Assembly (NCBI GenBank): GCA_044892505.1
Contig: CM097882.1
Location: 270,816,001-270,880,000 of the forward strand
Reading direction: 5' to 3'
DNA length: 64,000 bases
Source of the DNA: Schmidtea nova
Taxonomy: Eukaryota
Below are positions 15,240 to 41,975 of this stretch, in pieces. Both the position numbers and the translations under genes were made by a program. The notes below the pieces were generated by a model, which was given only the letters and a program-made list of their open reading frames with translations, made no database searches and had not been told where the DNA came from. Positions within the stretch are counted from its first letter, which is position 1. Each line of letters starts with the position of its first letter.

Positions 15240-15244
<5 letters not shown>
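15066..15244 (-). repeat. Hammerhead-bearing Penelope-like pseudo-LTR repeat, copy 1 (partial fold-back, (TA)n on both sides)
   Basis: Reverse complement of TACACACTTGATAAAGGCTGTGCCGAAATATTGTGT at 15168-15203. 38-bp inverted repeat at 15105-15142 and 15207-15244. Confidence 0.75.
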
Positions 15245-15276
<32 letters not shown>

Positions 15277-18200
15277 ATTTACAATTAAAAATATATGTTT
15301 TAAAAGCACAATTGCTGCAAAGATGTGTCTAAGTTAAAAATCGGTTATTCAAACCGTCCTCAGAAATAAAGAAACAAAAGCTGGACCTAAATGGCTCAAC
15401 AGCTCCGACTAAGAGTAAGGTAATAAAATGGTAGGTTGCCATGGATTTTGCGCGATAGTAACAACCCAGAATTGGTTGTTACTTTTCCTATGAAAGTTCC
15501 CTTCTAAAATTTAGTTGTCTGAACTGAAAGAACAAGATAGTATAAATACTTTTGCTCCGTGATCGCATGTTTGTGAATAAATAAAATGTCCTCTCAACAA
15601 CGATCAATTTTCTCAATTATTGTTTCTCCAATTAAGGTCTTAAAGTTTCTATAAAAAAATTTTGTCTCTCACAAATTTTAGCAAATAAACTATTGTCCTT
15701 CTCTAATAATTTTCACGAGTAAAATATTGTCGCTTCAAACTGATTTGCAATTAGTTTAAATAGTATTTTGAAAACACACGCAGGTCTCCGCGACCAGACA
15801 TGATTAAACTCGACATATTTTATTGTGAGTTCTTTCATGCTCTAAATGCATAACTTTTTACGATTTTGAGTTTTATTTAAAAATGATGAAAATTTTTTTT
15901 TAATCGCTAAATGAATATGATTAAAATTCACATTATAATGAAAGAAAGTATTCGTTTTAAGATACCGAAATTGAGTGATGTAAAAGATTTTAACTATTTA
16001 AAAAAGAGCAATAAATATATGGAATCTACAAAACAAGAATTCCAGCACCTATTTTTGGATACAGCATTGCATCATGCTGAAAAAAATCAAAATCTATAAG
16101 AAGTGTAATATCACCTATTCTAACTGATGAAAACTACATGATTTTTCTGAATGATTGCTGAACATTCGTTAGAGAAACCAATGTACACTACAGTTTTATT
16201 CAAAAATCTGTTAAAAAGCAATCTAAGTTTATTCTCCATGGGATTAAAAACTAAATATTAAATACTGTGACTGGTTTCAAGATTCTCTTAGATATTCAAT
16301 CAACCCATAGATATTTTTGAAATAAATATATATTATAGAATATAAAAATAAAGGCAGATTAAATGTACATATACAGGATAATAAAACAATATTTTGGACA
16401 ATACATTATATAATTTAAGCCAAACCAAACCGATTATATGACATTTGATCTTTGACTTCATGTTCCATCTTTTTAATTTTTACTTTCAAGTGATTATCGT
16501 TCAGTGATGTTGAAAATGTAACTTGAAAAGACATTTGTGATTATTAATATTTCATCTAATAATATATGTGATCGTTTATATTTCATTTACTGTGCAAATT
16601 TAATATCTTGAAGATTTAATCGTCTATAATATTGTTATTAAATTTTCGGTATTTCTTTACTTTATCGGCCGTTTTTTAAATATTGTAAATATTTTCAAAT
16701 TAATAAATAAAAATTTACTTTATGTTTAAAGTTGATTGTTCTGATTATTACGGTAATTCTGTTTTAATATTCCAGGTAAGATTTTATAAAAAGAATATAC
16801 CCCGGCCTACCAAAAGTCTCCAGTCAGGCAGTTATGTACATATTGCAGTTTATAATAAACAGAAATGGAAACAAATGTCACAAACGCACACGAATACTGA
16901 ATGTCTGTAGTGCTGAGAGAGTTAGTACTTCATTATATCACCTTTCATCTGTATGTACAAGTGTGAGCCCTGGACTCACTACTACCTAATTTGTTCGTTG
17001 TATCTGTCAGCTCACAATGCTGTAGAATTATTTTTACGACGACACAAAATCGATCTTATTAGACCACTTTTAATTGATATGACGAATGTTTTGCCTATGC
17101 CGAAAAAAATTTTATACTATGATCATGAATCATTGAACCGGTGTGATTTAAGTGATTTTAGGTGTTTTATTTTTCAGTTTTTTGATGGAGCTTAATTGCA
17201 GCTATAACCCATCAGCTAGGTATTTCTGTTTAAAGTTCAGAAGAAATCATTTATTTTTAGAGATAATACGTGGAAAATCCCCGTCGGCCGGGATTGTGAA
17301 TTCGCAAATAATGTTTTAATTCTTTGTACAGGAATAAGTATTGGTGATTTGTTATTTCTTTTTATTTTGATTTTCGTAATGTAAATTAATTAAACAATTT
17401 TATTAGGTTTATATGATAATTTTTCATATTTATTTATTTAATGATTGGGTGTGTAATTTCGATGTTTGTTTCACCATTTTTACTCATTATAAGGGCAACT
17501 ACTTGAGTTGGTGCTTTGTTTTTCAAATTGAATTTATAAAATTTCCACCAATCTCACCTTGATATTCATTTAAATCGCTTTAAATGACATTGTATAACGT
17601 ACAAAAGTCTACGAGAAATTATGATCGATTTTGGCTAGATCTCTATTTATTAAATTCACATTCGTTCGTCATAATGATAAGTAATTGCATTCTCGTTATT
17701 ACACTCCTGAAATATTTCAATATAATTTTATGCTATATACTTGAATGTTCTTAATTTAAAAGAAGTTTTAATTTTTTTGAACTTTTAAAATTTTCCATTT
17801 TTATTGATTTTTACTAAGTTTTATGCTTTTTATTTTTGTATTTTACTAATTTTATTAAACCCCAACATACTTATTTTACGCGAACCTATAAAAACAAATC
17901 AAATTTTTCAATAACAACATTGCATCGACAGGGCTAAGGTTCAACTAATAACATTAATTCAATTACTGATATGCAAAATGAATACGAATCCGGAAAAGCC
18001 TGGGGCACATGTACTTTTTTTAATTATAATTTTATATTGAGATTTTTTTTACTAACTGCCTTGCTTATTATGCATAACTATACAAATTTCAGAAAATTTC
18101 TTAGGTCGTGAATAGTATTTTTGAGGATTAAATTCTCTAAGACATTATAATATTTACACAGGCAGAAATGATTAGTTAATTATCTACAAGTATCATTTTA

Positions 18201-18499
18201 GTAATAATCGAATTTAATAATTACTGTCATATACTTATCTGTAGGCCAGTGACAAATAAATTTCTTCTAATTTCAAACATTGTTGTAGCATTTGATGCAG
18301 AATTCAATTGTATGATTTTTCCCGATTATTTCATGCAATTGTCAGCAGCTGTTATAAATCAATTCTCAAACACGAACAGTTTATTGGGCTTCGTTAGAAA
18401 TTTTTGTTAGAACTCAGAAAATTTTTAATTAATGAGATTTGCTGAGGGTTTTTTCCCTGTCAATTTTAAATAAATAAAACAATCAAATAAATAGAATCA

Positions 18500-20440
18500 A
18501 ATAACAATGACAATTTTAATTATAACAGCAACGAAAACCCGCAAACTGAAAATATAAATAATTGTCCTAACCCCAAAAATTCCCTTACAATCAGTTTAGT
18601 ACTCAACTTAAAGCAAATATCCCAAATTTTTTCACAAACGAAAATGGGACACCGAAAAAATAGCTCGAATTTGCCAAACTAACATTAAGTTTATCAGGGA
18701 TTAAATCATCAAAAACAGCATGTTCCCACATAATTGCAGCACTCCCCAGCAACATAATAAACGAGATAGCCGACCGAATAGACGATATATCGAAAGATGA
18801 TGATCCTTTTGAAAACCTATACAACACTAATAAACCGAAGTAAGGTTAACGGGCTAGAACTACTCGAATCTTGCTTAAAAGACATTGAACTAGGCAATGA
18901 TAAACCCTCAGAGTTTCTGCGAAATTTAAAAGCAAAACTCGAATATCTACAACCCAAAATAACAAGAACTGGGTCAACAGAATTCATTAAGGACCTATTC
19001 ATGCGTGCAATGCTTCCAATGCTATTCTAGCAGTCAGCAATTGTACAGACCTCAAAACATTTGCAAACATTGCAGACAAAATTAACGACGAAATATACTC
19101 GACAATATGTAGAACCTACCAAAACAAAAATTACTTCCATGAAAAAGAACAAAACAAACAAAATTCTCTCAAATTTGACGAAATAATAATTGAAAATAAA
19201 AATCTGAGAAAAGATATAACAGAACTACAAAAAAGAGATTCCATAAGAACACAGTTCTACAAAAACAGTCAAAACTACTCCAGACAAAATTCAAGATCTG
19301 GAAGCCGAAACAGTTTTGACAGAAACAAAACCTGGAATAAACCACACAAAAACCAAAATCAAAACCATTGTTACTTCCACAATAAATTTGGGAATAAAGC
19401 GTATAAATGCAACAAACCCTGCTCTTTTGATAAAGAAGAGTCGGAAAACATATAAAGTCACCAATGATAGCACCGACAATTGGTGACAGTCAAACATTCA
19501 CGGTACATAGCAACAATATTGACTTTCTGGTGGATTCAGGCTCAATAATTTCATTTATAGCAAGCCACTTATACAAAAATTTAAAAATAGAAACAACAAG
19601 TTTGTGCGCACCCAACGGCAGCCCAATCAAAACATTAACATCATCGTCAACAAAATACAATATAACTGGTAATTCACTATCGCCGAAGCCAAACAAGCCA
19701 TTTTAGGAGCAGACTTCTTCTCAAAATTTAACCTACTAGTTGACTGTAAAAATAGAAGAATTATAATAAACAACTTCAACAACTCAGCCAACAAAAGCAA
19801 ACAATCAAACATACAAATTAATTGCGATATTGGAGTAATAACAACCCAGCACGGTGAAACAAAAGCAAATGAACAAAAAATAAAAACAGAAAATCAAAAC
19901 TGACAATATATACCTAACGAAATTATAAAACTCATACAAACAGTATCGAACATAACTAAAAAAACTAGCGGCAAACGACGAAACAAAATGCATAATCGAA
20001 CACGCAATAATTAGCAACGGAAATCCAGTTCACGAAAAAGTCAAACAGCTAGGCAAAAGAAAACTTGAAATAACCAAAAAAAATATTCGACGAACTGTTA
20101 GAAAAAAATCGTTAAACATTCTAACTCAAATTGGTAATCAGCCCTCATGCTTAAAGAAGAAAAAACAAATGGTGAATGGCGTGCTTGCGAAGACTACAGA
20201 GCATTAAATAGCATTACAACTGCCGATAAATACCCAATACCAATTAAAAATGACATTATCAACAGGGTCAAAAACCAAAATTATTCAGCCAAATTGACTT
20301 AGAAAAAGCATATCATCAAATTCCAGTCAGAACAGAGGACATAAAGAAAACAGCAATCATCACATCCCTAAGCCTTTTCGAATATAACAGAATGCCTTTT
20401 GATCTAAAAAACACAGCGGCAACTTTCCTACGCTTTCATT
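18500..20440 (+). mobile_element. Decayed Ty3/gypsy gag-protease-RT
   Basis: Gag ELGNDKPSEFLR, knuckle CYFHNKFGNKAYKCNKPC (~19366), protease FLVDSGS (~19521), RT motifs DYRALN..TADKYPIP, DLEKAYHQIPV, RMPFDLKNTAATF. Confidence 0.9.
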
Positions 20441-20944
20441 TGTCACCCTCCTCCCCATATGTTTAGAAAAGTCACATAAATATCCAGTTTGTAATTAATA
20501 AGTTGTTGCCCTATTTGTAATCCCATATTACTGGGATTGTTTTGTATTAATAGTTCGGTTTAATAATTATTACAATTATAAGAAATTTAAAATATATTTA
20601 AAAATTTAAAATAAAAAATTAATTAATAACCCAGGATAATAGAAAAAACTATAGAGAAAACTAGGGAAAAGACGAACAACCGAAAAATTAGAAATTAAAA
20701 GAAATTTATGCAAAATACGGAAAATTAAAAACTAAAGAAGATAAAACTTTTCTTTTAAAAATTATATAGTTTCTTCATACGTGAGTACCTGTTTGATATT
20801 TTATCGTTATTTTTTACTAATAAAATTTGTAAATTTGTTCATTATAAAATTATTATCCGATTTGTTAAACCATTCAATACATACAGCCACACAAACACAC
20901 AAGTACATAATCAACACAACATTCACCCCAGCAATCCCGTGACA
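20441..20944. mobile_element. Probable solo LTR interrupting the gypsy RT
   Basis: Begins TGTCAC and ends GTGACA (6-bp terminal IR). The RT frame stops exactly at its left edge. Only a 3-bp ATT duplication flanks it, so no clean TSD. Confidence 0.55.
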
Positions 20945-21109
20945 ATTTTTACAGGAGACTGCTGGGCTCTACAATCTTCCTCAACAACTATCATTTAATT
21001 ATCAATAGCAAGATATAACAATATACCTTTCTACATACGAATAACATTAAGTTTGTTTTACTTGATAACTTTGGGCTGCTACAATTATGGAGAAATTTGA
21101 GAATGCGTC

Positions 21110-21735
21110 TAGAATGTGCAATATCGCAGCAGCATCAAGTTTTTGTTTATGAATGAAAAAAATAGAGAAATATGTTCAGAGTTAAAAGCTACTTATGGAG
21201 ATTAGTGGTCATCACAGGCATCAATTTATCGCTGGTACAACAATTTCCAGAATGATAGAACCTCTGTAATCGACAATGACAAGTAAAGAAAACTTTTGAA
21301 ATTTGTGGAAATTACCAAAAAGCTAAAAACAATCGCAAAAAATGAAAGAAGAATTACATCCAGAGAATTAGCAATACGACAAAATGTGATTAAAAGTACC
21401 ATTTGCACTTTACTTACTACAAATGGGTTCTCATAAGGTTTTTATCACTAGAAATACAGCATCACCCTTTTATATCTGCAAGTAAAATTTGAAGATTTTT
21501 AATCGTTTTGGTGACAGTTTCTTGACTTCGTGGGTGAAACTCCACTATCACTGTTTCAGAGTCAAAGCGAGAATCCTGAGAATGGAGAGTCTTGAGAGAG
21601 CAAATTTCTGGGATGATAATGGCATTGTTTTATCTGATTTTGCCGAAAAGTGTTTGAATTTAACAGTACCTACTACTCGAACATCAAACAATGTCAGGAA
21701 GCTCGGAAGAAAAAATCGAGTATCTGAGTGAACAT
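21110..21735 (+). mobile_element. Heavily decayed mariner related to the 13.7-kb copy
   Basis: QYRSSIKF..., IYRWYNNFQNDRTSV, NERRITSREL and FWDDNGIVLSDFAE parallel the 13.85-14.9 kb transposase. Confidence 0.8.
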
Positions 21736-22215: not shown

Positions 22216-23031
22216 CATTCTCGGCAAAGAAGCAATGACTACTAAGGGAATCGATAAGACGCTACTATTTTATGTATACGATAATTGAAAGACTTTTCGA
22301 TATCCTTAAGAAGATTTCTTTGTTTGAGTAGGTGCAAAATGAGAGATCTCAGCTTGAGAAACACAAGTTTCAGCTTCTCGAATGTTTGCTAATTTTAAGA
22401 ATTATTTTTTACTACTTTTTTAGTTGTTGTTTTTCAAAGTTTCTCGTAAATTTTAAGTGTAAATTTTATTTAATTATAAATAATATAAATATAATAATCA
22501 ATTAAACTTAGTAATTATGTGTGTGAATTGTTTAACCAATACAATCCCCTTACTGAAATTAACGTAACATTGTTCTAGATTGCTATGCTCAAAGGATAAC
22601 ATTTGCCTGTTACACCTGCAGTCCTGTGTCATTCCTGTTTAACGCTCGTGTTTCCCTCGATTTACGTCTAAGTTTTTTCAAATTTCGACAAACATTAAAC
22701 AGATGACAATTATTAATGTGAATAAATAATATTATAAATTTCTAAACACAGTGCTGTTGCCCACGGCCGTGAGTCGTGTCAATAGGCAACAATTGATGTT
22801 TCTTGATTTTGTTATTTCGGCGAGCGGTGTATGGTCATCCGATAAGGTTACTATTCATTCTTGAATGTGTTAGTCGTTTGTATGCATTTTCCATTTTCAT
22901 ATTTAGGTAATTTTTCCATTTATTTTTTTATTTTTCGTGCTTGTTAATGTATGTGATTTTCAAGTTTCATTTTTTATTTAATTATTTACTCCAATCAAAA
23001 AATGCTAATCCAAGAAAAACTATTAATTTAA

Positions 23032-24750: not shown

Positions 24751-27201
24751 AAAATAAACATAATCGGTGGTTTAGTTCAGAGTACCAATCCTAATTTGGT
24801 ATTAATTGCGTGTGAGATTATAACAATAAATTTATAAGTTTCATAATTCATTAAACGTTAATTTATAATTTCAAATGAATTCATTTATTACATGCAAATG
24901 AACTATTTTTATAGGGACCTCATTTTCCAAATAACCAAGTTAGCTAAAAAACAAACGAAAAGAAAAGCTTTTTTTTTTGGAAGTTAAAATCAAAGTTTTG
25001 GATAGACTAGCCAGAAAAGATGCCACTTCTGTAGGAGAATATTATAATAAATTGAACAGGTATAAATTAAGCATCATTTATAAGTTATAAAATTTAATCT
25101 AATTTATAAAGNNNNNNNNNNNNNNNNNNNNNNNNNNNNNNNNNNNNNNNNNNNNNNNNNNNNNNNNNNNNNNNNNNNNNNNNNNNNNNNNNNNNNNNNN
25201 NNNNNNNNNNNNNNNNNNNNNNNNNNNNNNNNNNNNNNNNNNNNNNNNNNNNNNNNNNNNNNNNNNNNNNNNNNNNNNNNNNNNNNNNNNNNNNNNNNNN
25301 NNNNNNNNNNNNNNNNNNNTTAATTTTAAAATTAACAATTTTGGACAATTAAAAGTTAAATTAGTAAGTAATAATGATAACTAATATTTCATCTAAATAA
25401 TTTAAAATTTTTTAAGCTTAACTTCATTTCTAGAATAACGCATTTTCAATGGAATAAATTAATGCCTACGGAATAAAGCAATGCTTATGAGGTAAAAAAA
25501 TTTAATATAAAATTTATAAATTTTATTAAACTTTATTTATTAAAATATTGATTAAATTATGTTAATTTATTAAATTTCATGTCATTATTTGTAAATTATA
25601 TTGAGTAATAATTATATTTTATTTAAATAGGTATTTTTGGATGATCAAGAATAAGCGACATTTACACCGAACGAGAATAAATTTAATTTAAGGTATTTCT
25701 TAAATAACTTATTTATAAATTATAGATAAGATATAGATACCAAGGTGACTATGATTAATTTATTCTATTTTTAAAATATAATGGAGTATGAAGGGTTTTT
25801 TCACCCTTTATTTATTTAATTGAAGCATGTCAGTGGTTGTGATGGACGACCGTGATCCAACCTAATGGGAGGCCATTGCGATGTTCGATAATTTTGTAAA
25901 CATTTTAAATAAATCATTCATAGGGTTTATGACGATATCTTTTGACACTTTCATGGCATATGAAAAACTACGTTGTGGATGATGTCTTGGTAGATGGCCA
26001 TGCCCAGGTAATTTCGACCCAAACTTCTGGGATTGCAGCGATTACCCTTGTGAACACGATCACTTGCCCAGCATGTATTTTAGGCACAGGCATTTACTAA
26101 CCACTCTTTACTTTATATAAATTAATAATAAATAATAATAATTTAGAAATTAACAATAACAATAATTAGAAAAATATTAATACTTGGAAAAATAGTAAAT
26201 AATAAAGATAATTAATAATAAAGCTTTAAATAAATATGTAATAATAATAATTATAATTGTTCCGGATAAATTTTAATATCTAGCTTTAAATAAAAAGGAT
26301 CGAGGACGAGATCAATGTCATATTTAAGTTTAACAATGTACAGCATTGAGTATTTTCGATGCAAATGTGTATGAGCGGGACTGTTGAGGGATCTAGAGAG
26401 ACTAGAATAATGAACACCATACAATAGAGCCCAATCATGAGTGCTTATTACAAATGAACTGAAAGAAAAATTTCTCATTAAATAATCATTTAAATTAGTT
26501 CGTAGATAATCAAAATACTACTTAAGAAAATCATATTTTTTCTCCATTATCTTTATTAAATTATTTTCATCTATCAAATTCTGATAATGCGAAAATAGAG
26601 CGATACAAATCGTCATTTTGTAAAAACCATTCCAAATTAACTGGGTCTAAAAATCTCTCAAGACCTTTATTTCTTTCTGGACAAATTAATGAACTTGATG
26701 ATTTGATTACATCATCGTTTGGGGTTTTTCGTGATTTTATATAAATAGCACAATTTAAAATTGAGAAAATTTCAGCGAAAATTAATTTTTTATTAAATCT
26801 CCAGTTTCAAAAAATACTGAATTCAAAATCAACTCAACACAACACTATATAACAATAGCACTATATAACACTCAGCGAAAATTTGATTTAAAAAAGCAAC
26901 CAATCCAATTGGTCACAACAAAGAAGAATCACCAACCAACTGGATACACACCAATTTTTATTGGTAAACACAAAGAAAAATACACCAAAAAACTCCGACA
27001 GACCTCAACACACACTATCCATCACATTCAATGCAAAGTCTTTCAAAAAACATTACAAGCGATCAAATCCACAACAATAATAATAATACATTGAAAAAAT
27101 AGTAATTAAAAAAATTTTTGAATAATTAATAATAATATTAAAGATTTAAAGAAACATGTAATAAAAAAATTATTAATTAAAATTATAATTATAATAATAT
27201 G

Positions 27202-27400
27202 TTATTATCAATAATTCTCATAATGACTATAGATCAAATTTTTTTATAAACAATAACACAATATTTCGGCACAGCCTTTATCAAGCTGTGCCGAAATATT
27301 GTGTTATTGTTTATAAAAAAATTTGATCTATAGTCATTATGAGAATTATTGATAATAATAATAAAAAAAGGTCAAAGGTGAAAAAAGATAATTATGATAA
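27202..27400. repeat. Pseudo-LTR repeat copy 2: perfect 74-bp fold-back
   Basis: 27202-27275 is the exact reverse complement of 27285-27358, with a 9-nt loop CTTTATCAA. The right arm continues into the family tail AAAGGTGAAAAAAGATAATTATGATAA. Confidence 0.9.
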
Positions 27401-28439
27401 TAATATGTAATAATTAAAATAATAATGTTAATTAATAAAATAGTATTAATTATTAAAAATAATTTTAATTAATAATAAAATTTATAAGTAAAATTACAGT
27501 ATTCAAAATGATTAATTCAAAATAAAAATGGGGGAGGGGGAATTGGCCATGTGTTGAATTTAAATTTTTTAACCTTAAATAAACCTAGACCTTTGACTTA
27601 AAGTAAAAAATCATTATAACATGATCGATAACGTCATAAAAAATTTAACATTAAGGATCCTCGATTTTGATTAATGAGTAATTATCGAGAATTACATAAC
27701 AGTCTTGTCAAAACAGGAACACAGGCATTGATAATGGAGTATTTTTTTACTAAAAACCGCTGAAACAACAGCACTACTTGAGAAAGAAAATACAGTGGAA
27801 AATATTTTAGTAACGAAAGTGATGTTCAAGTTTTACATAAACGAATGCGCATTTCTTCAGATAGTGATAGTATTTTAAAAATATAATTTATGTTTTATTT
27901 TGCCATTTTTTATTTCATCAAAATGACTTTTTTATGTTTTGTTAAATTATGATTTTTGTTAAATTTGTATTTTTAATTGTTTTTTAGTTTTCCTGTATAA
28001 ATAATATTCTCATAAACATATCTAATATGTATTTAAATAAAAATGGTGTAAAGCATGTAAAAACCTTCAGTTTGTACACTCCAATAACATTATTTTGGTT
28101 CATTTTACAATTTTAGTTCATTTTACGTCTATCCTTCCGTCCATCACTCCATTTTAATAAATTATAACTAAAACAATTATTACAACTATCGTGCAATTAT
28201 TGTATTTTTTGTTGTAAATTATGGAAAAGGAGTGTAAAATATATGTTAGTTATTCAAAATACCTGATATTGAGGGAAAATATTTTTTATGTATCTAATAC
28301 TTATTAAATTCTAAAGAATGTGATTGATATTTAACGGGATTTTTTAATAAATAGTCTTCAGTGCGCTGCATGTTCGTAAATATACCGCGAATCTTCAATT
28401 CACGAGTTAGTCAAAAGATTATTTGCTAATCTTCTAAGG

Positions 28440-28470
28440 CAGTGCTACTCAAAGTAGTGGTCTGTAGACC
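28440..28470 (+). mobile_element. Orphan hAT-Charlie terminus
   Basis: CAGTGCTACTCAAAGTAGTGGTC resembles a Charlie-type TIR. No partner TIR was found. Confidence 0.5.
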
Positions 28471-29109
28471 ATCAGCTACCATTTCACAGAAAACACTAAG
28501 AAAAAAATCTAGCTACATACCTAAATTTATTACTGTTGGATGATTGAGGAAAACAAATTGAAACATTCATCCTCAACAAATACTACAGGACTGAGGCAAA
28601 CAGTTACCGAAGTCCAGCCCGAAGATTCCCACAATAATAATTAATCTAAATTAATCTGTGCATCAAGCAACCTTTTTGTATGCATTTACCAATCCTCAAT
28701 AACAAGTGATCATCTGTACATAAAACAATTCTATCGAATCAAACCTGCCCCATCAACTATAGTAGTTCTATCATCATGTAAATATAACAATCTCGGCTGT
28801 GTAAATAAAAACAATATCGTGACAATCCTAGTGCTAATTCAATAACTGAGTTTATATATTTATATTATTTATTTTTGTATTTAATTATGTGGTTAGTGAA
28901 TTATATTTTATTCTGTTAATCTTAATTAGATTTATTTTCTAGAGAATTAATTATTGAAAGTAAAAGTAAATAACAGAAGTGCATTATTATGTAAATAGAT
29001 TTCATGTAAACAATAAAACTAAGTAAATAATTAATTCTAACATGGGTTATGGAAATAATTACAATAAGAAAATTAAACAATTATTTAATGTAAACAGTTC
29101 GCCGCGTCC

Positions 29110-29696
29110 AGCTCCGATTGCTTTCCTCATCAAATTCTGTATTTTTACGAATCTTCTTTTCCTCATAGCTTTTAGCTTCCAACTGTTATCCACCGACCGC
29201 AACAACTCGAATACCAGCTACAAATCCACTGGGATCGGTTTTGAATAACAGTGGCTTATCCATCTCCTTATCATAAGAAAATGCGATCATTGAACAGCCT
29301 AGTGGCATCATTTCAGCTGATTGAGTGTACAATTGATTAATATCGGCAGAACATCGACAAATCATGTCACAGGACATTTCGTAACCAATTTTGCATTTAA
29401 ATTGTGCAGCTTCCATTTGTGCACGGCATACTTGCGATCCGCAATCAGAAATCATTCCGGTCCTATCGCAACCGATACTTTCAGTTATGTTAAATAATCT
29501 TGTAGCTGAACTCCTTTCATTCATTTTATCTGGGACTTTTCTTTGTGTAGTATCTACGCCAATCATTACCTCGAACACCAACAGAAAGTAATCCATCTAA
29601 CGCAATCGCTTTAAATGCATATTCGGCTTGAAATAATCTGCCTTCGGGTGAAAAAATAGTCATATAACGATCAAAAACTCTCGAGCCCAAAGACAT
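29110..29696 (-). pseudogene. PSMA6: Intronless 5' fragment of 20S proteasome alpha-6 (alpha1-type) subunit
   Basis: [31 protein letters not shown]...TQRKVPDK...YTQSAEMMPLGC...KTDPSG. One frameshift near 29570, a stop at ~29186, and truncation before the C-terminus. Confidence 0.92.
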
Positions 29697-29889
29697 TTAA
29701 TTTATTAAATTTTCCAATCCAATTTTATTCGAAAAACATTTTTAATTCCTCAATTTACAATGCAATCAGCTTCCAATAAAATCCAATCTAATAATTCAGA
29801 TCTAATAATGCCATTCAGCAATTTTTTTAAATTAAACTTCCGCCAATTAAAATTAAACAGCTCAGTAAAACAAACTAAAATCCAGTCCA

Positions 29890-31037
29890 ATATTTTTAAT
29901 CAATTTATATTTTCATTATCAGAATTATCTGCTGCTCCTGATAGATCAGATTTAAACACGATGCCTTTTTCAGTTCTGTATTGTATATTTTCAGATTTCG
30001 GAGAACTCAGATCAAGATTTCCAATTGGCTCAGAATTAATAGTACAATTAATTCGATTCTAGTCAAGTCAAATACGACTTATGAGTCAGTATCATCTGCT
30101 GTTGGTTCAATCTCATTATTTACACGTATATCTTCATTGGAATCAACATCTGTCAAAGGATAGTCTAATTTCTTTTCTAAATCAACTTCATCACAGGTAA
30201 TTTCGGATGTTTCGTCGACTAAATTAGAAGTATTAGGTGGAACAATTATTTCGTCGACACTGCTATCTTCAGGAGGATGAGATGTGTCTGAGTGGGACTC
30301 TGATGATACGGGTATTTTCCTTCGCAACCTCGATTTTGATGAAAGTGCTGATAAATCCATGTTTATTGTTAAATTATTTTTTTTCTAATTCTCGTATCTT
30401 CCTTCAATTCTGGTAGCCTTGTAAACAGTAAATGAACAATTCGTTCCAGTGTACATTCTGCTGTGTGCCTCAACAACTCGGATAATTGCGCTTCGAAACA
30501 TATTCTGAAGCAGCTCGATATGATCTTGCATACATCATAATCACTGTTTAAATATCCAGCCGGTACATGCATTAGTGTATCAAGAAGTCGTAATATTTTC
30601 ATTAAAATCACCTCATCTGAGCTATGATCAGTTCCAATAAACTTCGTATTAGTAACTGTATTAGCAACTGCTTCAATAGCGATTTGCAGTGCATCATTAT
30701 CACTGGTCATCGAAATATCTATATATCGAAAACTAAGAAATTTCTCCACAGCAGTCAAAGCTAATCCAGCAATCAATCCAATCATTTCATCGGAACTAAT
30801 TACATCTAGAAATGGTGAGAGAAATTCCAGCGGTTTTAGTTCTGATAGATCATTTATCTGAGATAATGTAGATTTAAGGCTCGATAAATTACTGTACAAC
30901 GGATCTGATATTTCTTCTTGATAAGAACGAATTGCGTTGCCTTTCATTCTTCTTTTCATGGCAGTCATTAATAATCTTACTTCTAATTAAACGACATATT
31001 TAGCATTTTTCTTGCTGGTCATTTAGAATAGATATTG
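29890..31037 (-). pseudogene. GBF1: Intronless 5' fragment of GBF1-type Sec7 Arf-GEF (DCB domain plus linker)
   Basis: FLSPFLDVISSD..GLALTAVEKFLS, GTDHSSDEVILMKIL, CFRICFEAQLSELLRHTAE..LFTRLP. The start ATG ACC AGC AAG lies ~16 nt after the SL. A YRTEKGIVF motif near 29960 parallels the YVNPRGVRF motif of metazoan GBF1. Confidence 0.92.
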
Positions 31038-31078
31038 CATATAAGATTTATATAGATTTCGATAAGACCGTCTAACGG
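31038..31078 (-). other. Planarian spliced-leader exon joined to the GBF1 5' end
   Basis: Minus strand reads CCGTTAGACGGTCTTATCGAAATCTATATAAATCTTATATG (41 nt), matching the triclad SL1 as I recall it. It is followed by CAATATC rather than a GT donor. Confidence 0.9.
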
Positions 31079-31229
31079 TCTTAATACTATATAAACTAAT
31101 ACTATATAAAGGGTTCGAAATTTAGTATACACCATATAAAATTATTTTTAACCTTTTCGAGTTGTCAACTAGTCAAAACCAAGATCAGGATACAAAATAA
31201 AACGATCTACACTGTATTTGGTTGACTTC

Positions 31230-31673
31230 AGCCACGTGCTTTTGATTTTCTGAATATCTTTCATAGCATTCAGTGTCAGCTGTCATCTCTGGAATGTCAC
31301 CTCTCAGTGGCAATGAACCGTTTCCTTCCGATTTTATGAAATCTTTCAAGGCCGCAACAAGAATCCAGAAAGATTTTGACTCGCGGTGAATGTCAATACG
31401 ACAAGGATCCTCTAAAAGAGTCCTGACGTTGATTAGAATCTCAGAAAGAAAAACAGTCATTGGAATTGACTTCCTTGCTTCTCCGAAACTCTTTAAATAT
31501 AGGGATAGGGGTAAGTCCTCTTTTGAGGCGCATAATCTTAGATAATCCTCGCGTCTTTTACTGATCATTTTCCTCAGATATGGTCTGTCTTTATACGAAT
31601 TTGGCCATTTTTCGAACTGAGATTGGAATGAAGTGATAGATTTCATCAAATTGTCTTTTTGATTTACGAGCAT
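31230..31673 (-). pseudogene. NAE1: Intronless internal fragment of NEDD8-activating enzyme regulatory subunit (APPBP1)
   Basis: SFWILVAALKDFIKSEGNGSLPLRGDIPEMTADT parallels APPBP1 [33 protein letters not shown]. Both termini are missing. Confidence 0.88.
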
Positions 31674-31679
31674 CGATTT

Positions 31680-32398
31680 CTACTATCAATTTTATCAATA
31701 TCATTGCCTTCAGATCTATCTTCTATATCATCAAGCATAAGTTTGGGGTTGAACAAAATGCTCGTTCGAAACTTATAACAAAGTTTACAAATTGGAGAAT
31801 TTTGAAGTTTTTCTGTAACAGGTGTTCGACCAACATTCAATTTGCGCCAATAATCACTGTCAGATATCGGTGAATTAAATTGTAGCTTTTCTACAATTAC
31901 TGAAGATCGCACTTTATCAGAAATGATTGAATCTCTCGAAGGCAACAGTGAGGTCTTCGGAACTTCTCGGACAAACGAAATGTCTCAAACAAAAGGTTTT
32001 CTGGCAAAATTCTCTTCTGAATTAAATTTTTGACTAGGGGTCCGCCAATTGAGGAATTCTTGGTTAATAGTAAAAAAGTTTTTCTCGTAAACTTCGAAAA
32101 ATAATTTTGGTAGAGTTCTGCTGAGACAGAATTTTTACCAGATGGTTGTAGGAAATTCTGCTGATTATGATTTTGTGGGCGGTATTTATATCGGGAATTG
32201 CCTGCTGTTTTCGTTGATGCATTTAAACAAATTGTTCTAGAAGGAATTTTCGATTTTTCCAAAATTAAATTTAATAATTTTAAACAAAATTAATTTATTA
32301 TTTTTGTAAATTTTTTTATAAAACTTTAAATAATTTATTTTTAATCTAAAATTTTACTTTTAAATTAAAGTTTTTTCTAATTTAGTTTAATTTACTAA
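31680..32398 (-). repeat. AT-rich leader plus broken ORF of an unidentified repeat family (homolog at 55405-55950)
   Basis: AAATTAAACTAAATTAGAAAAAACTTTAATT...TTCTAGAACAATTTGTTTAAAT(G/A)CATCAA is shared with the plus strand at ~55405-55600. Confidence 0.75.
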
Positions 32399-32809
32399 AT
32401 TTTTACGTAAAACCGCTTTCTTTTATATTTTCTGAGTTTTTAGGGTAATAAATCGAAATTTTTGTGAAAATATGTAAATTTTCTAATTTTCTAATTTTAT
32501 TTTCTAATTGCTGTTTTAATGTTATATTTGTGTTTTTATCGTGTATACTTGATGCGCTTTTGTTCAGTATAATTTTAAAACGTATTTTATTTAATTTTTC
32601 AGGTGTTTTGTGGTTACTGTGTTTTATTTGGTGTTTCAACTCATAGCATTTTAAGTTTACTACTTGCGCGCTATCTACATGCTGTGTTACCTCTTCATTT
32701 AAACAAATCTCAGTTTTTGTCCAACACCATATATTTTTGAAATTTTCAATAAACATTAGATTAAAATAATTATTCTTATGTGTTTTTTTCATATATTTGA
32801 AATCCCTTG

Positions 32810-33112
32810 CATCTAGGAACTAAGTGATCACTAAACATAGTTAGTGGGTCACTGTGCAAAAAGAATTTACGCTCACTAGTCTTCACTTAACTTTTCAATG
32901 AGCGGATAAATTCCCTACTCAATCAATTAGTGCATTCGCATAATATCAGAGTACCAAAAAAATATTTCATTAAAGAGAATAATCTATTATTAACTTATAT
33001 TAAGTTCACATGTTGTTTAAAAATCGAGCAGTGTTGATAAAAAAGGATCAGTGAGCATCTATAAATACTTGTTATCGATCATTTATTTTCGTGATCGCTA
33101 AGTTCCTAGATG
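32810..33112. mobile_element. MITE with 22-bp TIRs (303 bp)
   Basis: CATCTAGGAACTAAGTGATCAC versus GTGATCGCTAAGTTCCTAGATG, 20/22 match. No TSD identified. Confidence 0.75.
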
Positions 33113-33430
33113 ATAATATTATTTAAAATGCTAGCTGCTATGTCGAATTTACGTAATTATGAAATAAGACCATATCTATGAAATAAATATATAAATTATT
33201 AAATTGTGCTAATATTAAATCTATTTATTTAATTAAATATTATTAAATTTTAAAATTAAATCTATTCATTATCAACAGAATTTTATTTGATGTCTGCAAG
33301 GAGTTTCAAAACTCCTTTTAAATTAAAAATAATTTAATTAATTAATTTGACTATTAGCATTTTATATATTTTATACTAATATAATATAATATAATAAGAT
33401 ATTAATATAATAAGATATAATATAATAAGA

Positions 33431-33517
33431 TACACACTTGATAAAGGCTGTGCCGAAATATTGTGTTATTGTTTATAAAAAAAAAATTTTTTGATCTAGT
33501 CATTATGAGAATTATTG

Positions 33518-33597
<80 letters not shown>
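33431..33597 (+). ncRNA. Pseudo-LTR repeat copy 3 with minimal hammerhead-like motif (U3-A8 variant), ending in (TA)n
   Basis: ACAC-TTGATAA-A-GGC(TGT)GCC-GAAA-TATT-GTGT at 33434-33466. Stem I ACAC/GTGT, stem II GGC/GCC, palindromic AATATT stem III. Confidence 0.65.
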
Positions 33598-33600
<3 letters not shown>

Positions 33601-33729
33601 TCATTATTATTAGAATTACAAATGTCTCAGTTGTTTAAATATTCAGAGACAAACTTGGGAACTTGAGATAATCGCTTTTATTTAAATTGATGATTATGGA
33701 AGAAGACTTGAATTTAATTGCTTCTAACA

Positions 33730-34450
33730 TAGCGACCACGATCACGAATCTTTTAAAAATAGACTGCTTTCTGAAATTCCCCAAAGACGATAATTTTGAA
33801 GATTTTAACAAAGACTGTCAGATAGGGAAACGAAGACATCTATCGAAATGCAATTAATTTTGTCCACTATCCTTTTGGACAGATCCTTAATGAAAGGTTA
33901 TGAAGCCAGAGAAGGAAAAACGATTGAAGATAAACTTCGTGGACTATTCGGATAGTTCAGAGGACAGATGTGATGAAGCTCAGCACCCAAAAGAACACGC
34001 TTCGACACGAGATACAAAATCAGAGCAATTATATTACAAAAACAGTTATGGATAAATTAGAAAATGTTGAAATAGTAAGGAAAAACAAAAAATTAAGATG
34101 TTAGAATGATAGTAAACTGGAAACAGCGGGAAAGATAGAAATTGAAGTTAGAATTGGTTAAGAAAGGAAACTAACATTTATTGTAGTTACGTTGTTCCAG
34201 ATATAATTGGAGGAGTGGAATTACAAAAACAGTTTGAAATAGAATTTATATATCGAATGAATTTATTTGTGAATTAGAAGTGAGATTTATAAGAAATATT
34301 ACAGAAACCGAAAGACTAAAAAACAATAGAAACTTTAAAATTATATGAGAATAATAAACTGTTAGAAATTGTAAAGAAAAATATAAATGTTTTTATGACC
34401 CATTTACCAAATAATGATCGATTAATTGAGATCCTAAGGAGGAAGGGAGA
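33730..34450 (+). mobile_element. Decayed gypsy PBS-gag-protease
   Basis: LTR-end CA at 33728-29, then PBS-like TAGCGACCACG. Gag (M)ATTITNLLKID..DDNFEDF. Protease tail PDIIGGVELQKQF. Confidence 0.7.
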
Positions 34451-37450: not shown

Positions 37451-38247
37451 AAAACACCATTCCGTCCCGCACATTAGATGGAATAGACCAAAGAGTTGTG
37501 ATGTTCCCAATAAAGAGAGACCGACGATGGGACGTGAAGAGATATGGAGATGGTCTTCTATTGAATAAGTAGAACCCGCAGCAGAGGCAAGCAGGGAGTA
37601 GTCACCTCAGAGGTCGCTTACCTGCAGACTTGATCTACGTCGTGGTGTACAGCACCAACATGAGAATAAAAGGGTTTCATGGGTACACACTCGTAAGGGA
37701 CGTATTTATGAAAACGTCTACGATAAATTCCCCTGAGACAGAAATGAATTGTAAGAAAACATCAAGTGGCACACCAACAAAACAGGGAAAAAATTTGAAT
37801 TATGTTTTATAAATTTTTATCAGTTCATTTTATCGATGGAAGTGGGACCCCTTGGCCCACTATTACTTGGCTATGTAATTGCATGGCACCCTGCTTAGTA
37901 TAAATTGTCGACATAAATTTATTTACGAATTAAGTTAGTAATATTTTATTATTTCTTCTACGCACTTTAATAATTGAAACCACTTTAAATATTATAGCTA
38001 AATTGACAAATGTTAATGTTATTATTCTATTATATAATTATACAACACCTAACAAATCAATTTATTTTTTATGTCGTGGATCATCAATTCTGACCTACAG
38101 AACAATGACCACGATATTTAAACTTCTAAATCATTGCGGGTCAGTGAACAAAAAAATATTTTTACGATAATATTGATCTTGAATTGTATGATCATAGTTG
38201 ACCCGCCAATAGATTTCATCTTTTGGATTTTACTTTTATGCTGGATT

Positions 38248-38405
38248 ATAAACAATAACACAATATTTCGGCACAGCCTTTATCAAGTGTGTATTTAGGC
38301 TGTATTTAGGCTGTGCCGAAATATTGTGTTATTGTTTATAAAAAAATTTTGATCTATAGTCATTATGAGAATTATTGATAATAATAATAAAAAAAGATCA
38401 AAGGT
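38248..38405. repeat. Pseudo-LTR repeat copy 4, fold-back, running into a gap
   Basis: ATAAACAATAACACAATATTTCGGCACAGCCT, then a spacer, then AGGCTGTGCCGAAATATTGTGTTATTGTTTAT and the family tail. Confidence 0.85.
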
Positions 38406-38538
38406 NNNNNNNNNNNNNNNNNNNNNNNNNNNNNNNNNNNNNNNNNNNNNNNNNNNNNNNNNNNNNNNNNNNNNNNNNNNNNNNNNNNNNNNNNNNNNNN
38501 NNNNNNNNNNNNNNNNNNNNNNNNNNNNNNNNNNNNNN

Positions 38539-39292
38539 TATGAAACAGTTAGACAGAGGGGTACTTAGACTTTGCAGATGAGTTAGACTACAAAGGATTC
38601 GAGCCATTAGTTATTAGAGCACAAATGCTTAGGGAAAACGATAAAGCGAAGGTTCATTCTGACATAACTAAACTGCTCACAATCTTTGTCAAAAGAGGAA
38701 TGAGAATAGACACAATATCACAAAAAACTGACAAAGATGTGTGGCAGAAATATATTGGAATAAGTAGAGAATACGACATCCAACAGGTTTTACGGAAAGG
38801 AGCATGTTCTGACAAGATAACCTAAGGTAGACTTGCTTGTGCCTTTCCGGAGATGACAGCAATTATCTTTTCAAAGATGGGATCCCGTTACTCATCTGAT
38901 CAAGTTCCTGCTTGCTTCCTGCAAGCTTGTTTCCTAAAGCGATCTCAGAAGGCCACCTTTCGCATATGTTGTTTTGCAAAGAACTTGATACGATTATTAA
39001 TAAAAGTCCCGTTCATGCTAAAGTGGAGCAATTTTAGACTATAAGTCATACTTCGAAATTATTTAACGAAGAACAAAGGGAGGCTATCATGAAAAAGCTA
39101 ATGCAAAGCAACCCCTCTGTGAATATGTATTTCCCTCAAGGGTCAGTTTTGCGACACTTACCAACAGTTATTATCAAACCTAGAGAGAAAAGACCAGTCA
39201 CTGACGTTGATGATTCCAGTGAAACTTATGACGAGATTAGCATTTCAGCAATGGGAACAGGTTCTACTAGAGGAAAAAGAGCGAGAAAGTGA
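38539..39292 (+). pseudogene. Endogenous viral element: Phenuiviridae-like (phlebo/tenui) nucleocapsid
   Basis: FADELDYKGFEP (phlebovirus EFAYQGFD), D..KLLTIFVKRG (D..KMIVLALTRG), DKIT*GRLACAFP (LTLSRVAAA), HMLFCKELDTIIN (HSLYLLQFSRVIN), SKLFNEEQR. Motif order and spacing fit. Two stops and one frameshift. Confidence 0.8.
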
Positions 39293-39699: not shown

Positions 39700-41975
39700 C
39701 TTTTCATTACTTAAAATTTCCCAGCCCCCATTTGCATGCATCCAAGGTATAACATTTTTTTGTAACTTTGCAAGTATCCTTTTAGCAATTTTTTTTCAAT
39801 TTCATTGGTTTCATCTTCAGAACATCATCTGCTCTATAAATTATTCTATTCTATTTCAATCAATTCCAGTGGTAAATAAGACATCTAAAACTTCGCCTTC
39901 ATCCGCTTCTTGTCTTATTAATTCTTTAATANNNNNNNNNNNNNNNNNNNNNNNNNNNNNNNNNNNNNNNNNNNNNNNNNNNNNNNNNNNNNNNNNNNNN
40001 NNNNNNNNNNNNNNNNNNNNNNNNNNNNNNNNNNNNNNNNNNNNNNNNNNNNNNNNNNNNNNNTTTTGTGTGTTCGAATAGTTTAGGATACATGATTTTT
40101 ATTAACTCTATTAGAACATCAACGTCCTTATCTTTAATTGACGTTTTGTTTGCAATTTCTTTCCGTTTCTCAGCAATGCTATTATTCTTTGATTTTAGAA
40201 GTCTATTTTCTTTTAACGTTACGGTCATTATACCTCCTATAGCTCCTATTGCGTTTTCTTCATTATCTTGTTCGTCTAGGTCTAATTTTGAAATCTTCTT
40301 GTTGACTACTTCTAAGCCTTTTTTTATTGAAATTGTTATCACGTTATTTCAATAAAATCCCATAATCCATTAAACAATCTTCGTTTTGCATCTTCATCCC
40401 AGAAAAATATAATATTATCTCATCATTTATTCCTAGATCGGCATGCCAATTTGATCTGCCTATGTTTCACATTTTTTACCTTTGTACACGCATGTACCCC
40501 TTGTTTATGAACAATCATTCTAGGCGTATCTTTATCATTTTTTTTCTAATGTTATTTCTAATGGCTCCTGTAATTTTTCATTTTTTCGGACATAATCGTT
40601 TTAACATTTCAACATCTCTTTAATTTCAATTTCCAATTCAAATAATTGTGTTACTCTTTGTTTCCCAACTAATAATGGTATCAAATTTCTCAGATTCTCC
40701 AGATATATTCCTTCTTTCATGAATTTTATTTAATATTCTCAACATTTCATTATTATCTACTATATAATTTCTTAAAGATTCCTCTAATTCCTGTCTCAAA
40801 ATATTTTGTCTATCTAATTCTGCTTAAAATTGTTCATCTCTTTCTATTTGCTGTCTCAACTCTTCATTATCTATCCTGTCTTCATTTGTAAAAATTTTGA
40901 ATTCATTTATCGATACATTAATTTTATTCCTCTCCATTAATCTCTTATATTTTGTTTTAAATTCTTGTAATTGATCTCTCAGCATCTCAATTTCATTATT
41001 CGACTTTAACATCCATAATATTTATTTGTTTAATTTCAGGCTCTTTATTAAATTGAACTCTATTCGGAGATTCGACTCGTGCATTTTTACATGCTTTTGC
41101 CATGTGGCCATATTTTTGACAGTTGAAACATCTTATTTCTCCGCGAAAATTAACTTTATCTCTTCCATCATTACTAAACGGACTCGGTCGCCTATCTCTA
41201 TTAAAGGTTTGTCGAGTAGGACTCATTCTCCTTCCTCTAAAATTGTTTCTATTTATCTCAAAATTGTTTTTATTATCACTTTCTTTTTTCGTCATATCGA
41301 TTTGTTCAAGTATATTCGAAATAATTAACCCTGTTGCTTGGATTATCATTAAAACGATTATTTTTATTGTACACACTATTTCCAAAACGACTATCTCTAT
41401 TATAATTTCCTCGACTCCTACTATCTCGATTATAATAATTATCTCTGTAATTCCCCACATAAGAATTTCTATCATTAAATGCCAAACGATCATTATTCCG
41501 ATTATTCGATCTACCTCTCGAACTACTAGGTCTATTATTGCTATCAAAGCTATGACTCGGACTTGGACTAGCCTTTCTCCTATTTTTAACATAATTTAGA
41601 TATAACTGTTTCATCTCCTCCCTATGAATGTTATCATCCTTATCATTTTTTTTGTTTTTTTGTTTTTCAATTTCCTGAATTTCTACTGCATCAATCACAG
41701 AATTAAATCTATCTCTTTGTATTGCTTCGATTCTTCGTGCCTTTTGTACTAACTCATTTAAATCCTCATATTCTACCATTACCAAAGATTTGTATAAATG
41801 TTTTTGAATAACATTCCAAAATTGGTCCTCAATTAGTCTTGTAGTATGTTCTCACACACCGAAGGCTTTTCGAGCTAATTCGGTTAAATTATAAACATAT
41901 TCTTCAATTGTTTCTTTGCAACCTTAATATCTATTTCGAAATTTTTGTACATTTATCTTTTGTAGATCTCGCTCG
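39700..41975 (-). mobile_element. Decayed gypsy gag-pol
   Basis: Gag with R/N/S-rich tract and knuckle RCFNCQKYGHMAKAC (~41090-41135). Downstream pol remnants include an RT-like YRADDVL near 39825. Confidence 0.8.

What the first reader, a model, noticed from the sequence alone, without database searches (positions are those of the whole stretch)
28440..32400. Co-oriented chain of reverse-transcribed RNA fragments from unrelated genes (NAE1, SL-GBF1, PSMA6)
Seen: within ~4 kb on the minus strand lie a repeat-family leader, an internal NAE1 piece, a spliced leader plus ~1.15 kb of GBF1 5' CDS, the 5' region and ~195 codons of PSMA6, and one further unidentified piece. All are in one orientation, intronless, truncated, without poly(A), and carry stops or frameshifts. 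Knowledge: these are unrelated housekeeping genes, and SL is added only to mature mRNA. Inference: one RT copied an RNA to its 5' end and jumped to the internal 3' end of another, repeatedly, building a multi-gene cassette. This is the best candidate here for an undescribed RNA-capture system.
Basis: partly seen in the sequence, partly recalled or inferred. Interest (0 to 1): 0.9.

Follow-up and report, generated by a model that had tools for sequence, protein, structure and literature searches.

The report
Mosaic retro-pseudogene of three host mRNAs
A flatworm genome segment holds decayed, intron-free pieces of three unrelated housekeeping mRNAs (NAE1, GBF1 with its spliced leader, PSMA6) joined head to tail, most likely one reverse-transcription accident of an already described type, not a new system.

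Summary
On the minus strand between about 32394 and 29088 lie a 270-nt repeat "leader", about 480 nt of unidentified sequence, an internal NAE1 fragment, a flatworm-type spliced leader joined to the GBF1 5' UTR and N-terminal coding region, and PSMA6 from its start codon to about codon 200. The three identifiable pieces are co-oriented and truncated. GBF1 and PSMA6 carry stops and frameshifts.

RNA origin is well supported. The spliced leader sits directly on the GBF1 5' UTR. The PSMA6 piece is colinear with a related cDNA and lacks an intron that a related genomic copy has.

Serial template switching by a retroelement reverse transcriptase is the best explanation, because two neighbouring pieces keep their 5' ends and lack their 3' ends. 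It is not proven: no target-site duplication, poly(A) tail or parental sequence could be obtained, and the reverse transcriptase is unidentified.

This mechanism is already described (bipartite and tripartite chimeric retrogenes in mammals and fungi), so "undescribed RNA-capture system" is not supported. The number of mRNA pieces is unusual. Searches also found a second chain (SNF8 fused to PSMA6) in other flatworm-like contigs, which hints the process is common there.

The "further piece" at 28440-28860 could not be verified.

The parts
32127..32394 (-). Repeat-family 'leader': about 135 nt of very AT-rich sequence followed by about 130 nt at roughly 35% GC. It has a sharp 5' boundary shared with the second copy.
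   Evidence: 82% identity over 269 nt to window 55407-55673(+), E 2.5e-71. There is no significant similarity downstream of it. Its ORF has no protein homologues.
31650..32126 (-). Unidentified segment between the leader and NAE1, with exon-like GC of 33-40%. It may be one or more further RNA pieces or a continuation of the leader RNA.
   Evidence: No Pfam, PDB or homologue hits for its ORFs. GC profile.
31197..31649 (-). Internal fragment of NAE1 (NEDD8-activating enzyme E1 regulatory subunit), about residues 225-352. It is an open frame of 162 codons.
   Evidence: tblastn with NAE1 proteins. PDB NAE1 E 2e-12, residues 262-342. 310 library hits.
31083..31196 (-). Unassigned filler between NAE1 and the spliced leader. 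It ends in a 15-nt tandem duplication (31110-31080).
   Evidence: Read directly. Its resemblance to a spliced leader is at chance level. No Rfam hit.
31038..31082 (-). Flatworm-type spliced leader, complete or nearly so at its 5' end and ending in ATG.
   Evidence: Unique in the window. Shares its core and terminal TATG with published flatworm spliced leaders. Followed by the GBF1 5' UTR, not by a GT donor.
30381..31037 (-). GBF1 5' UTR (15 nt) and codons 1-211, covering the DCB domain. A TAA stop replaces codon 12 (30989-30987), and the frame shifts in the A-run near 30380.
   Evidence: tblastn with P0001 gives 89% identity, E 4e-118, and P0002-P0004 give 42-48%. Pfam DCB domain.
29901..30380 (-). 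Probable continuation of GBF1: the acidic, serine-rich linker, carrying further stops and frameshifts. This assignment is inferred, not proven by homology.
   Evidence: Contiguous with the DCB part once the 1-nt frameshift is allowed for. No database hit.
29707..29900 (-). AT- and G-rich, C-poor segment upstream of the PSMA6 ATG. It is either the PSMA6 5' UTR or junction filler, and it has no spliced leader.
   Evidence: Read directly. GC of 24-27%. Only about 10 nt upstream of the ATG align to cDNA L003.
29088..29706 (-). PSMA6 from its start codon (29696) to about codon 200 of 246. Lesions are a 2-nt deletion near 29560, a TAA stop at 29188-29186 and indels near the 3' end. It has no intron.
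   Evidence: Pfam Proteasome_A_N and Proteasome. tblastn with P0157. Colinear with cDNA L003. The intron present in genomic L002 is absent here. No significant homology beyond about 29088.

Best explanation
The segment from about 32394 to 29088 (minus strand) is most likely one composite retro-insertion: a multi-part chimeric retropseudogene.

Proposed sequence of events:
1. A retroelement reverse transcriptase was copying a 3'-shortened PSMA6 mRNA and reached its 5' end.
2. It jumped onto the 3' end of a broken GBF1 mRNA and copied that to its capped spliced-leader end.
3. It jumped again, through a short unassigned stretch, onto an NAE1 mRNA fragment.
4. It then copied one or two further RNAs, finishing at the 5' end of an abundant repeat-family RNA, the 'leader'.
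5. The concatenated cDNA was fixed in the chromosome and has since decayed neutrally, by an estimated 6% in nucleotides for PSMA6.

Shown: the RNA origin of the GBF1 and PSMA6 pieces, the order, orientation and truncation of the pieces, their decay (GBF1 and PSMA6), and the repeat nature of the leader.

Inferred: that it was a single event, the template jumps themselves, the type of reverse transcriptase (a non-LTR or Penelope-like enzyme is most plausible on biochemical precedent), and the way it was integrated.

It has no evident function and is a by-product of retroelement activity.
For: - The spliced leader is fused to the GBF1 5' UTR and start codon. A spliced leader is added only to mRNA, and here it lies in the middle of the chain, so the junction was made after RNA maturation.
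- PSMA6 is colinear with a polyadenylated cDNA, L003, over 577 nt. It lacks the intron of about 42 nt that genomic L002 has at the same position.
- GBF1 and PSMA6 both start at or near their mRNA 5' ends and lack their 3' parts and poly(A). Internal priming or template jumping predicts this pattern. Ordinary target-primed retroposition gives 5'-truncated copies that keep their 3' ends.
- The three identified host-gene pieces are co-oriented and lie within 2.6 kb. The other ORFs scanned across the rest of the 64-kb window gave only transposon proteins and one virus-like hit.
- Stops and frameshifts, together with an excess of first- and second-codon-position differences (12.3% against 6.3% for a functional orthologue), show an old integrated copy and not contamination.
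- The leader shares a sharp 5' boundary with a second copy that is followed by different sequence. This is what is expected for the last template copied to its RNA 5' end, as with the 5' partners of published chimeras (PMC2104539).
- An independent chain exists elsewhere: SNF8 residues 114-195 fused to PSMA6 residues 49-106, also without the intron, in two contigs that are 93% identical.
Against: - No target-site duplication was found.
- No poly(A) tail and no retroelement 3' end were identified at the 3' side.
- The true ends of the insertion are unknown.
- No parental genes from the same genome could be retrieved. Equal age of the pieces, microhomology at the junctions and crossing of exon junctions for GBF1 and NAE1 are therefore untested.
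- The NAE1 piece is internal at both ends and has no lesion.
- Only LTR-type reverse transcriptases are seen in the window.
- Co-orientation of three pieces has a chance probability of 0.25.
Confidence: 0.55

Rival explanations
1. Cargo of a mobile, non-autonomous retroelement. The leader is the element's own 5' end. The host-mRNA fragments were picked up by recombination during reverse transcription, as happens in LTR retrotransposons, retroviruses or yeast Ty1 retrosequences. The whole unit has been copied around the genome.
For: The leader is repeated in the window with a sharp common 5' edge. The SNF8-PSMA6 chain exists in two versions that are 93% identical and share the same junction. 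P0001 is a second decayed GBF1 5' copy with an unrelated tail. LTR-type reverse transcriptases are present in the window.
Against: No LTRs or other terminal repeats bracket the chain. The only flanking repeats are copies of an abundant palindromic MITE-like element. The second leader copy is followed by unrelated sequence. No second copy of this chain was found. The 93% pair could be alleles or sister species.
Confidence: 0.15
2. Several independent retro-insertions accumulated at one permissive or hot-spot site. Later deletions removed their 3' parts and poly(A) tails.
For: The region is rich in transposons. Unassigned spacers lie between the pieces (31196-31083 and 29900-29707). Equal age of the pieces has not been shown.
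Against: It requires at least three insertions within 2.6 kb in the same orientation, each then losing exactly its 3' end while GBF1 and PSMA6 kept intact 5' ends. No poly(A) remnant or target-site duplication lies between pieces. No other host-gene fragments were found among the other ORFs scanned in the window.
Confidence: 0.12
3. Free cDNA fragments were ligated into a chromosomal double-strand break by end joining. Reverse transcription is needed, but there are no template jumps.
For: There is no target-site duplication and no poly(A). Short unassigned fillers sit at the junctions. Capture of cDNA at breaks is established in yeast (from my own knowledge, not checked with a tool here).
Against: End joining should give random orientation and random ends. 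Here three of three pieces share one orientation, and two begin at mRNA 5' ends.
Confidence: 0.1
4. The chain is an artefact: an assembly chimera or cDNA contamination.
For: This could not be checked against reads. The window contains assembly gaps elsewhere.
Against: GBF1 and PSMA6 carry stops, frameshifts and an estimated 6% of extra neutral divergence (PSMA6). The pieces are embedded in continuous AT-rich genomic sequence with no N run between 25319 and 38406. Contaminating cDNA would be intact and would carry poly(A).
Confidence: 0.03

Closest known systems
Chimeric retrogenes or retropseudogenes made by LINE reverse-transcriptase template switching: bipartite U6-L1 and similar chimeras in mammals, and WEIRD/Mg-SINE/MGL chimeras, including a tripartite one, in Magnaporthe (PMC2104539; PMC4476161; bioRxiv 10.1101/2025.02.02.635956)
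   Same: DNA copies of different cellular RNAs are fused head to tail in one orientation. They are intronless. The upstream partners end at their RNA 5' ends. The 5'-most partner is a repeated RNA. The products are non-functional by-products.
   Different: This chain has at least three mRNA fragments and probably two to four more pieces, against two or three in the published cases. No LINE or SINE part, poly(A) tail or target-site duplication has been identified. The 3'-most identified piece is a truncated mRNA. The host is a flatworm, and a spliced leader marks one junction.
Relict spliced leaders in genomic copies. One case is partial SL sequences at retroelement loci in flatworms (PMC12582326). 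Another is recycled processed cDNAs carrying SL relics in dinoflagellates (from my own knowledge, not checked here).
   Same: A spliced-leader sequence encoded in the genome upstream of a coding region is proof that a mature mRNA was reverse-transcribed.
   Different: Here the SL lies inside a multi-gene mosaic and on a decayed fragment. It is not at the head of a functional gene or a transposon.
Host-gene fragments carried by LTR retrotransposons (maize Bs1 with three gene fragments; yeast Ty1 retrosequences). Both examples are from my own knowledge.
   Same: Several unrelated host mRNA fragments are joined in one orientation by recombination during reverse transcription.
   Different: No LTRs, primer-binding site or element genes flank this chain.
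Ordinary processed pseudogene
   Same: It is intronless, derived from mRNA, and decayed.
   Different: There are several parental genes. The pieces lack 3' ends instead of 5' ends. There is no poly(A) tail and no target-site duplication.

Membership tests
Chimeric retropseudogene by RT template switching | Copies of at least two different cellular RNAs are directly fused in the same transcriptional orientation. | tested here: met
   NAE1, SL-GBF1 and PSMA6 all lie on the minus strand within 31649-29088.
Chimeric retropseudogene by RT template switching | The components are processed, meaning they come from mature RNA and have no introns. | tested here: met
   The SL is fused to the GBF1 5' UTR. 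PSMA6 is colinear with cDNA L003 and lacks the intron of genomic L002. This is not testable for NAE1.
Chimeric retropseudogene by RT template switching | There is a poly(A) tail, or a retroelement 3' end, at the 3' terminus of the chimera. | tested here: not met
   PSMA6 homology stops near 29088 with no A-run. No significant match to the cDNA 3' part follows. No Rfam or repeat hit lies downstream. The A-rich stretch near 28855-28885 is uninformative in a genome that is about 70% AT.
Chimeric retropseudogene by RT template switching | The insertion is flanked by short direct repeats (a target-site duplication). | tested here: inconclusive
   Only chance-level matches of 8-9 nt were found between the 5' flank and 27300-29200. 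The 3' end of the insertion is undefined.
Chimeric retropseudogene by RT template switching | Upstream partners end at the 5' terminus of their RNA, which is the jump-off point. | tested here: met
   The GBF1 piece starts with a complete or near-complete SL. PSMA6 starts upstream of its ATG. The leader has a sharp 5' boundary shared by both copies. The NAE1 piece does not reach its 5' end.
Chimeric retropseudogene by RT template switching | All pieces have the same age (a single event). | not testable with these tools
   No parental genes from the same genome were available. The only estimate is a rough 6% of neutral decay for PSMA6.
LTR-retrotransposon or retroviral gene capture | The captured fragments lie between long terminal repeats, with a primer-binding site and a polypurine tract. 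| tested here: not met
   No direct repeats bracket 27.4-33.4 kb apart from copies of an abundant palindromic MITE-like repeat.
DNA-level gene-fragment capture (Pack-MULE or Helitron type) | The fragments keep the parental introns and lie inside the transposon termini. | tested here: not met
   The intron is absent from PSMA6. An SL is present on GBF1. No terminal inverted repeats surround the chain.
SL RNA gene | The SL exon is followed by a GT splice donor and an Sm-binding site. | tested here: not met
   The SL is followed by 15 nt of UTR and the GBF1 ATG. There is no RNA-family hit.
Native adjacent intronless genes | The reading frames are full-length and open. | tested here: not met
   NAE1 covers only residues of about 225-352. 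GBF1 covers only its N-terminal part and has a stop at codon 12. PSMA6 lacks about its last 45 codons and has a frameshift and a stop.

The most novel reading that the evidence does not exclude
Triclad flatworm genomes may harbour an unusually jump-prone reverse-transcriptase activity, possibly tied to the RNA that supplies the shared 'leader'. It would routinely concatenate fragments of degraded host mRNAs into multi-gene mosaics, some of which are then copied further. That would make it a pervasive, lineage-specific source of mosaic DNA and not a single accident.

Three hints point this way:
- The leader has a second copy followed by a different downstream sequence.
- An independent SNF8-PSMA6 chain, found with a single query, exists in two versions that are 93% identical.
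- A second decayed GBF1 5' copy has a foreign tail.

The hits are too few, and were selected by the queries used, to say how common the process is.
Probability: 0.15. Interest if true: 0.65.

Novelty: new member of a known kind. Interest (0 to 1): 0.35.

Why it matters
This is a clean natural record of repeated reverse-transcriptase template jumping. The internal spliced leader proves that one junction was made after mRNA maturation and marks a jump-off point at, or within a few nucleotides of, an mRNA's 5' end. Five or more segments in one chain would exceed the bipartite and tripartite cases in the literature.

If such chains prove common in planarians, three things follow:
- They would show which retroelement enzymes are active in these genomes.
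- They would show how degraded mRNAs enter the genome.
- They would show how mosaic sequences arise, as raw material for new exons or small-RNA sources.

As a single locus it is a curiosity and not a new principle.

Tried and rejected
Attempts to retrieve parental genes or other copies of the chain all failed:
- Exact look-ups of the three window ORFs found nothing on record. The look-up of P0001 also found nothing.
- A protein-guided scan of JGI metagenomes with P0001 found nothing.
- An exact 25-nt spliced-leader scan found nothing.
- The full-library search with the NAE1 piece gave no hit above 60% identity (48% for the best-scoring hit).

P0001 (UniParc UPI0005FFA701) was considered as the GBF1 parent and rejected as a clean one:
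- It has a 3-residue deletion in the invariant SSDEV(I/V)LMKI motif.
- It has several derived substitutions at positions where the window copy keeps the ancestral residue.
- Its tail beyond residue 216 matches nothing.
- It may be the parental exon 1 read into an intron, or another decayed copy.

Other checks that led nowhere:
- Extension of PSMA6 through to a 3' UTR and poly(A): the alignment score is at shuffle level beyond about 29088.
- The filler before the SL as a second SL or an SL RNA copy: not significant.
- Homology between the two loci downstream of the leader: none.
- Target-site duplication: only chance-level 8-9-mers.
- Structured RNA families in 27000-34000: none inside the chain.
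- Homologues of the unidentified ORFs: none.
- A paper that prints the planarian SL sequence: none is held in the library. The identity with Schmidtea mediterranea SL1 therefore rests on my memory alone.
Full report
CONTEXT

The window is about 70% AT and dense with transposons:
- an intact-looking hAT transposase;
- mariner and piggyBac fragments;
- two degraded LTR-type retroelements.

The spliced leader described below has the form of flatworm spliced leaders. From memory it is identical to SL1 of the planarian Schmidtea mediterranea. I could not confirm this from a held paper. What I could confirm is its close resemblance to the published Echinococcus and Schistosoma leaders: a shared ACCGTTA..CGGTC..TTA core and a terminal TATG (PMC12582326 supplement).

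ANATOMY (minus strand, 5' to 3')

1. 32394-32127, the leader.
   - It has a second copy at 55407-55673(+), 82% identical over 269 nt.
   - Both copies begin at the same base. Nothing downstream of them is similar.
2. 32126-31650, unidentified.
   - GC is exon-like.
   - No homologues were found.
3. 31649-31197, an internal NAE1 fragment.
   - It covers residues about 225-352.
   - It is an open frame of 162 codons.
4. 31196-31083, unassigned filler.
   - It ends in a 15-nt tandem duplication.
   - Its likeness to a spliced leader is at chance level.
5. 31082-31038, the spliced leader.
   - It is followed by 15 nt of UTR and the GBF1 ATG at 31022.
6. 31022-30381, GBF1 residues 1-211.
   - 89% identical to P0001, with the DCB domain.
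   - A stop replaces codon 12.
   - After a 1-nt frameshift, an acidic, serine-rich continuation runs to about 29900. I take this to be the GBF1 linker but could not prove it.
7. 29900-29707, an AT- and G-rich stretch with no spliced leader.
   - It is either the PSMA6 5' UTR or filler.
8. 29706-29088, PSMA6 from its ATG (29696) to about codon 200 of 246.
   - It has a 2-nt deletion near 29560 and a stop at 29188-29186.

Beyond 29088 the alignment to the PSMA6 cDNA is at shuffle level. About 240 nt of AT-rich DNA and a block of moderate GC (28850-28300) follow.

RNA ORIGIN

- A spliced leader is added only by trans-splicing to pre-mRNA. Here it is encoded in the genome, joined to the GBF1 UTR instead of a GT donor, and it lies in the middle of the chain.
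- The PSMA6 piece is colinear with L003, a polyadenylated PSMA6 transcript from a related organism, over 577 nt (77.6% identity).
- L002, a genomic PSMA6 contig from another relative, has an intron of about 42 nt between the codons for K-x-G and Y. The window is continuous there.
- For NAE1, absence of introns could not be tested.

DECAY

Differences between the window's PSMA6 piece and cDNA L003 still concentrate at third codon positions (41%). At first and second positions they are about twice those of the functional orthologue L002: 12.3% against 6.3%. This suggests very roughly 6% of neutral divergence since inactivation. Together with the stops and frameshifts, it excludes fresh cDNA contamination and native genes.

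MECHANISM

- The telling feature is polarity. GBF1 and PSMA6 keep their 5' ends and lack their 3' parts and poly(A). Ordinary target-primed retroposition does the opposite.
- Two unrelated pieces with this polarity lie side by side in one orientation, next to a third host fragment.
- The other ORFs scanned across the rest of the 64 kb gave only transposon proteins and one virus-like hit.
- The best fit is a single cDNA made by a reverse transcriptase that ran to the 5' end of one RNA and continued on the 3' end of another, already shortened, RNA. This would have happened several times.
- End-to-end template jumping of this sort is an established property of non-LTR and group-II-type reverse transcriptases (established knowledge). 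It is also the accepted origin of bipartite and tripartite chimeric retrogenes (PMC2104539; PMC4476161 and bioRxiv 10.1101/2025.02.02.635956).
- The leader, a repeated sequence with a fixed 5' edge, plays the part that U6 or WEIRD RNA plays in those chimeras.

WHAT IS MISSING

- A target-site duplication.
- A poly(A) tail or retroelement 3' end.
- The identity of the reverse transcriptase. Only LTR-type enzymes occur in the window.
- The parental genes. Every route to same-genome sequence failed.
- As a result, equal age of the pieces and base-level junctions are untested.
- Co-orientation of three pieces is weak evidence on its own (chance probability 0.25).

RELATED SEQUENCES ELSEWHERE

- The PSMA6 query returned only two protein hits. 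One of them, P0006 on L001, is itself a chimera. SNF8 residues 114-195 are fused in frame to PSMA6 residues 49-106, again without the intron.
- A second contig, L004, from another sample carries the same junction at 93% identity and then diverges.
- The closest GBF1 relative, P0001, is a 278-residue model with GBF1 residues 1-216, its own deletion in an invariant motif, and an unrelated tail.
- These hits were selected by my queries and are few. They still suggest that decayed, chimeric mRNA fragments are not rare in these flatworms.

VERDICT

- RNA origin is well supported.
- Serial template switching is the best explanation but is unproven (confidence about 0.55).
- The "undescribed RNA-capture system" reading is not supported, because the kind is already known.
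- The locus is an unusually long example in a phylum where, as far as my searches show, such chimeras have not been described.
- I rate it a new member of a known kind, of moderate interest. There is a minority chance (about 0.15) that it reflects a pervasive, possibly leader-associated process that would merit a genome-wide study.

Noticed in passing
window 38553-38822 (+), directly after the N run 38406-38538: A 90-residue open frame matches the Pfam Tenuivirus/Phlebovirus nucleocapsid family (PF05733, E 8.7e-6, 25.9 bits against a cut-off of 25). It has no PDB sequence match. It may be an endogenous fragment of a bunyavirus-like RNA virus, which would be another non-retroviral RNA copied into this genome.
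   Followed up: partly
window 27202-27358; related copies at 15064-15276, 33420-33600, 38247-38420 and 49956-50042: This is a MITE-like repeat, one copy of which is a perfect palindrome with 74-nt arms. It gives sub-threshold Rfam mir-31 hits on both strands (46.7 bits against a gathering score of 51). Two copies happen to bracket the 6 kb that holds the chain.
   Followed up: partly
window 57120-62020 (+): A degraded LTR retrotransposon. Its LTR-like direct repeats are 4.54 kb apart and 91-95% identical. It carries broken protease, reverse transcriptase, RNase H and integrase zinc-finger frames.
   Followed up: partly
window about 18200-21700 (+): A second degraded retroelement, with a weak retroviral protease match and a reverse-transcriptase fragment.
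   Followed up: no
window 12622-12895 and 22336-22603: Inverted repeats of about 270 nt, 93-96% identical and about 9.5 kb apart. They enclose mariner-like frames (13766-14889) and the retroelement at 18-21.7 kb. This may be a large composite DNA transposon.
   Followed up: no
window 2096-3931 (+); 53039-54803 (+); 40999-41595 (-): An uninterrupted 607-residue frame with a hAT dimerisation domain, piggyBac-type transposase fragments, and a zinc-knuckle (gag-like) frame.
   Followed up: no
L001 1-826 and L004 1-746 (ENA ERZ2272692 and ERZ2272703): An independent chimeric, intronless chain from other samples. It consists of an unidentified 5' stretch, SNF8 residues 114-195 and PSMA6 from about residue 45. 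The two versions are 93% identical and diverge after the PSMA6 'KYK' codons.
   Followed up: partly
window 55673-55950 (+): The second leader copy is followed by about 280 nt at roughly 40% GC with no homologue, and then by AT-rich DNA and a 19-nt tandem repeat (56520-56750). This could be a second, shorter chain.
   Followed up: partly
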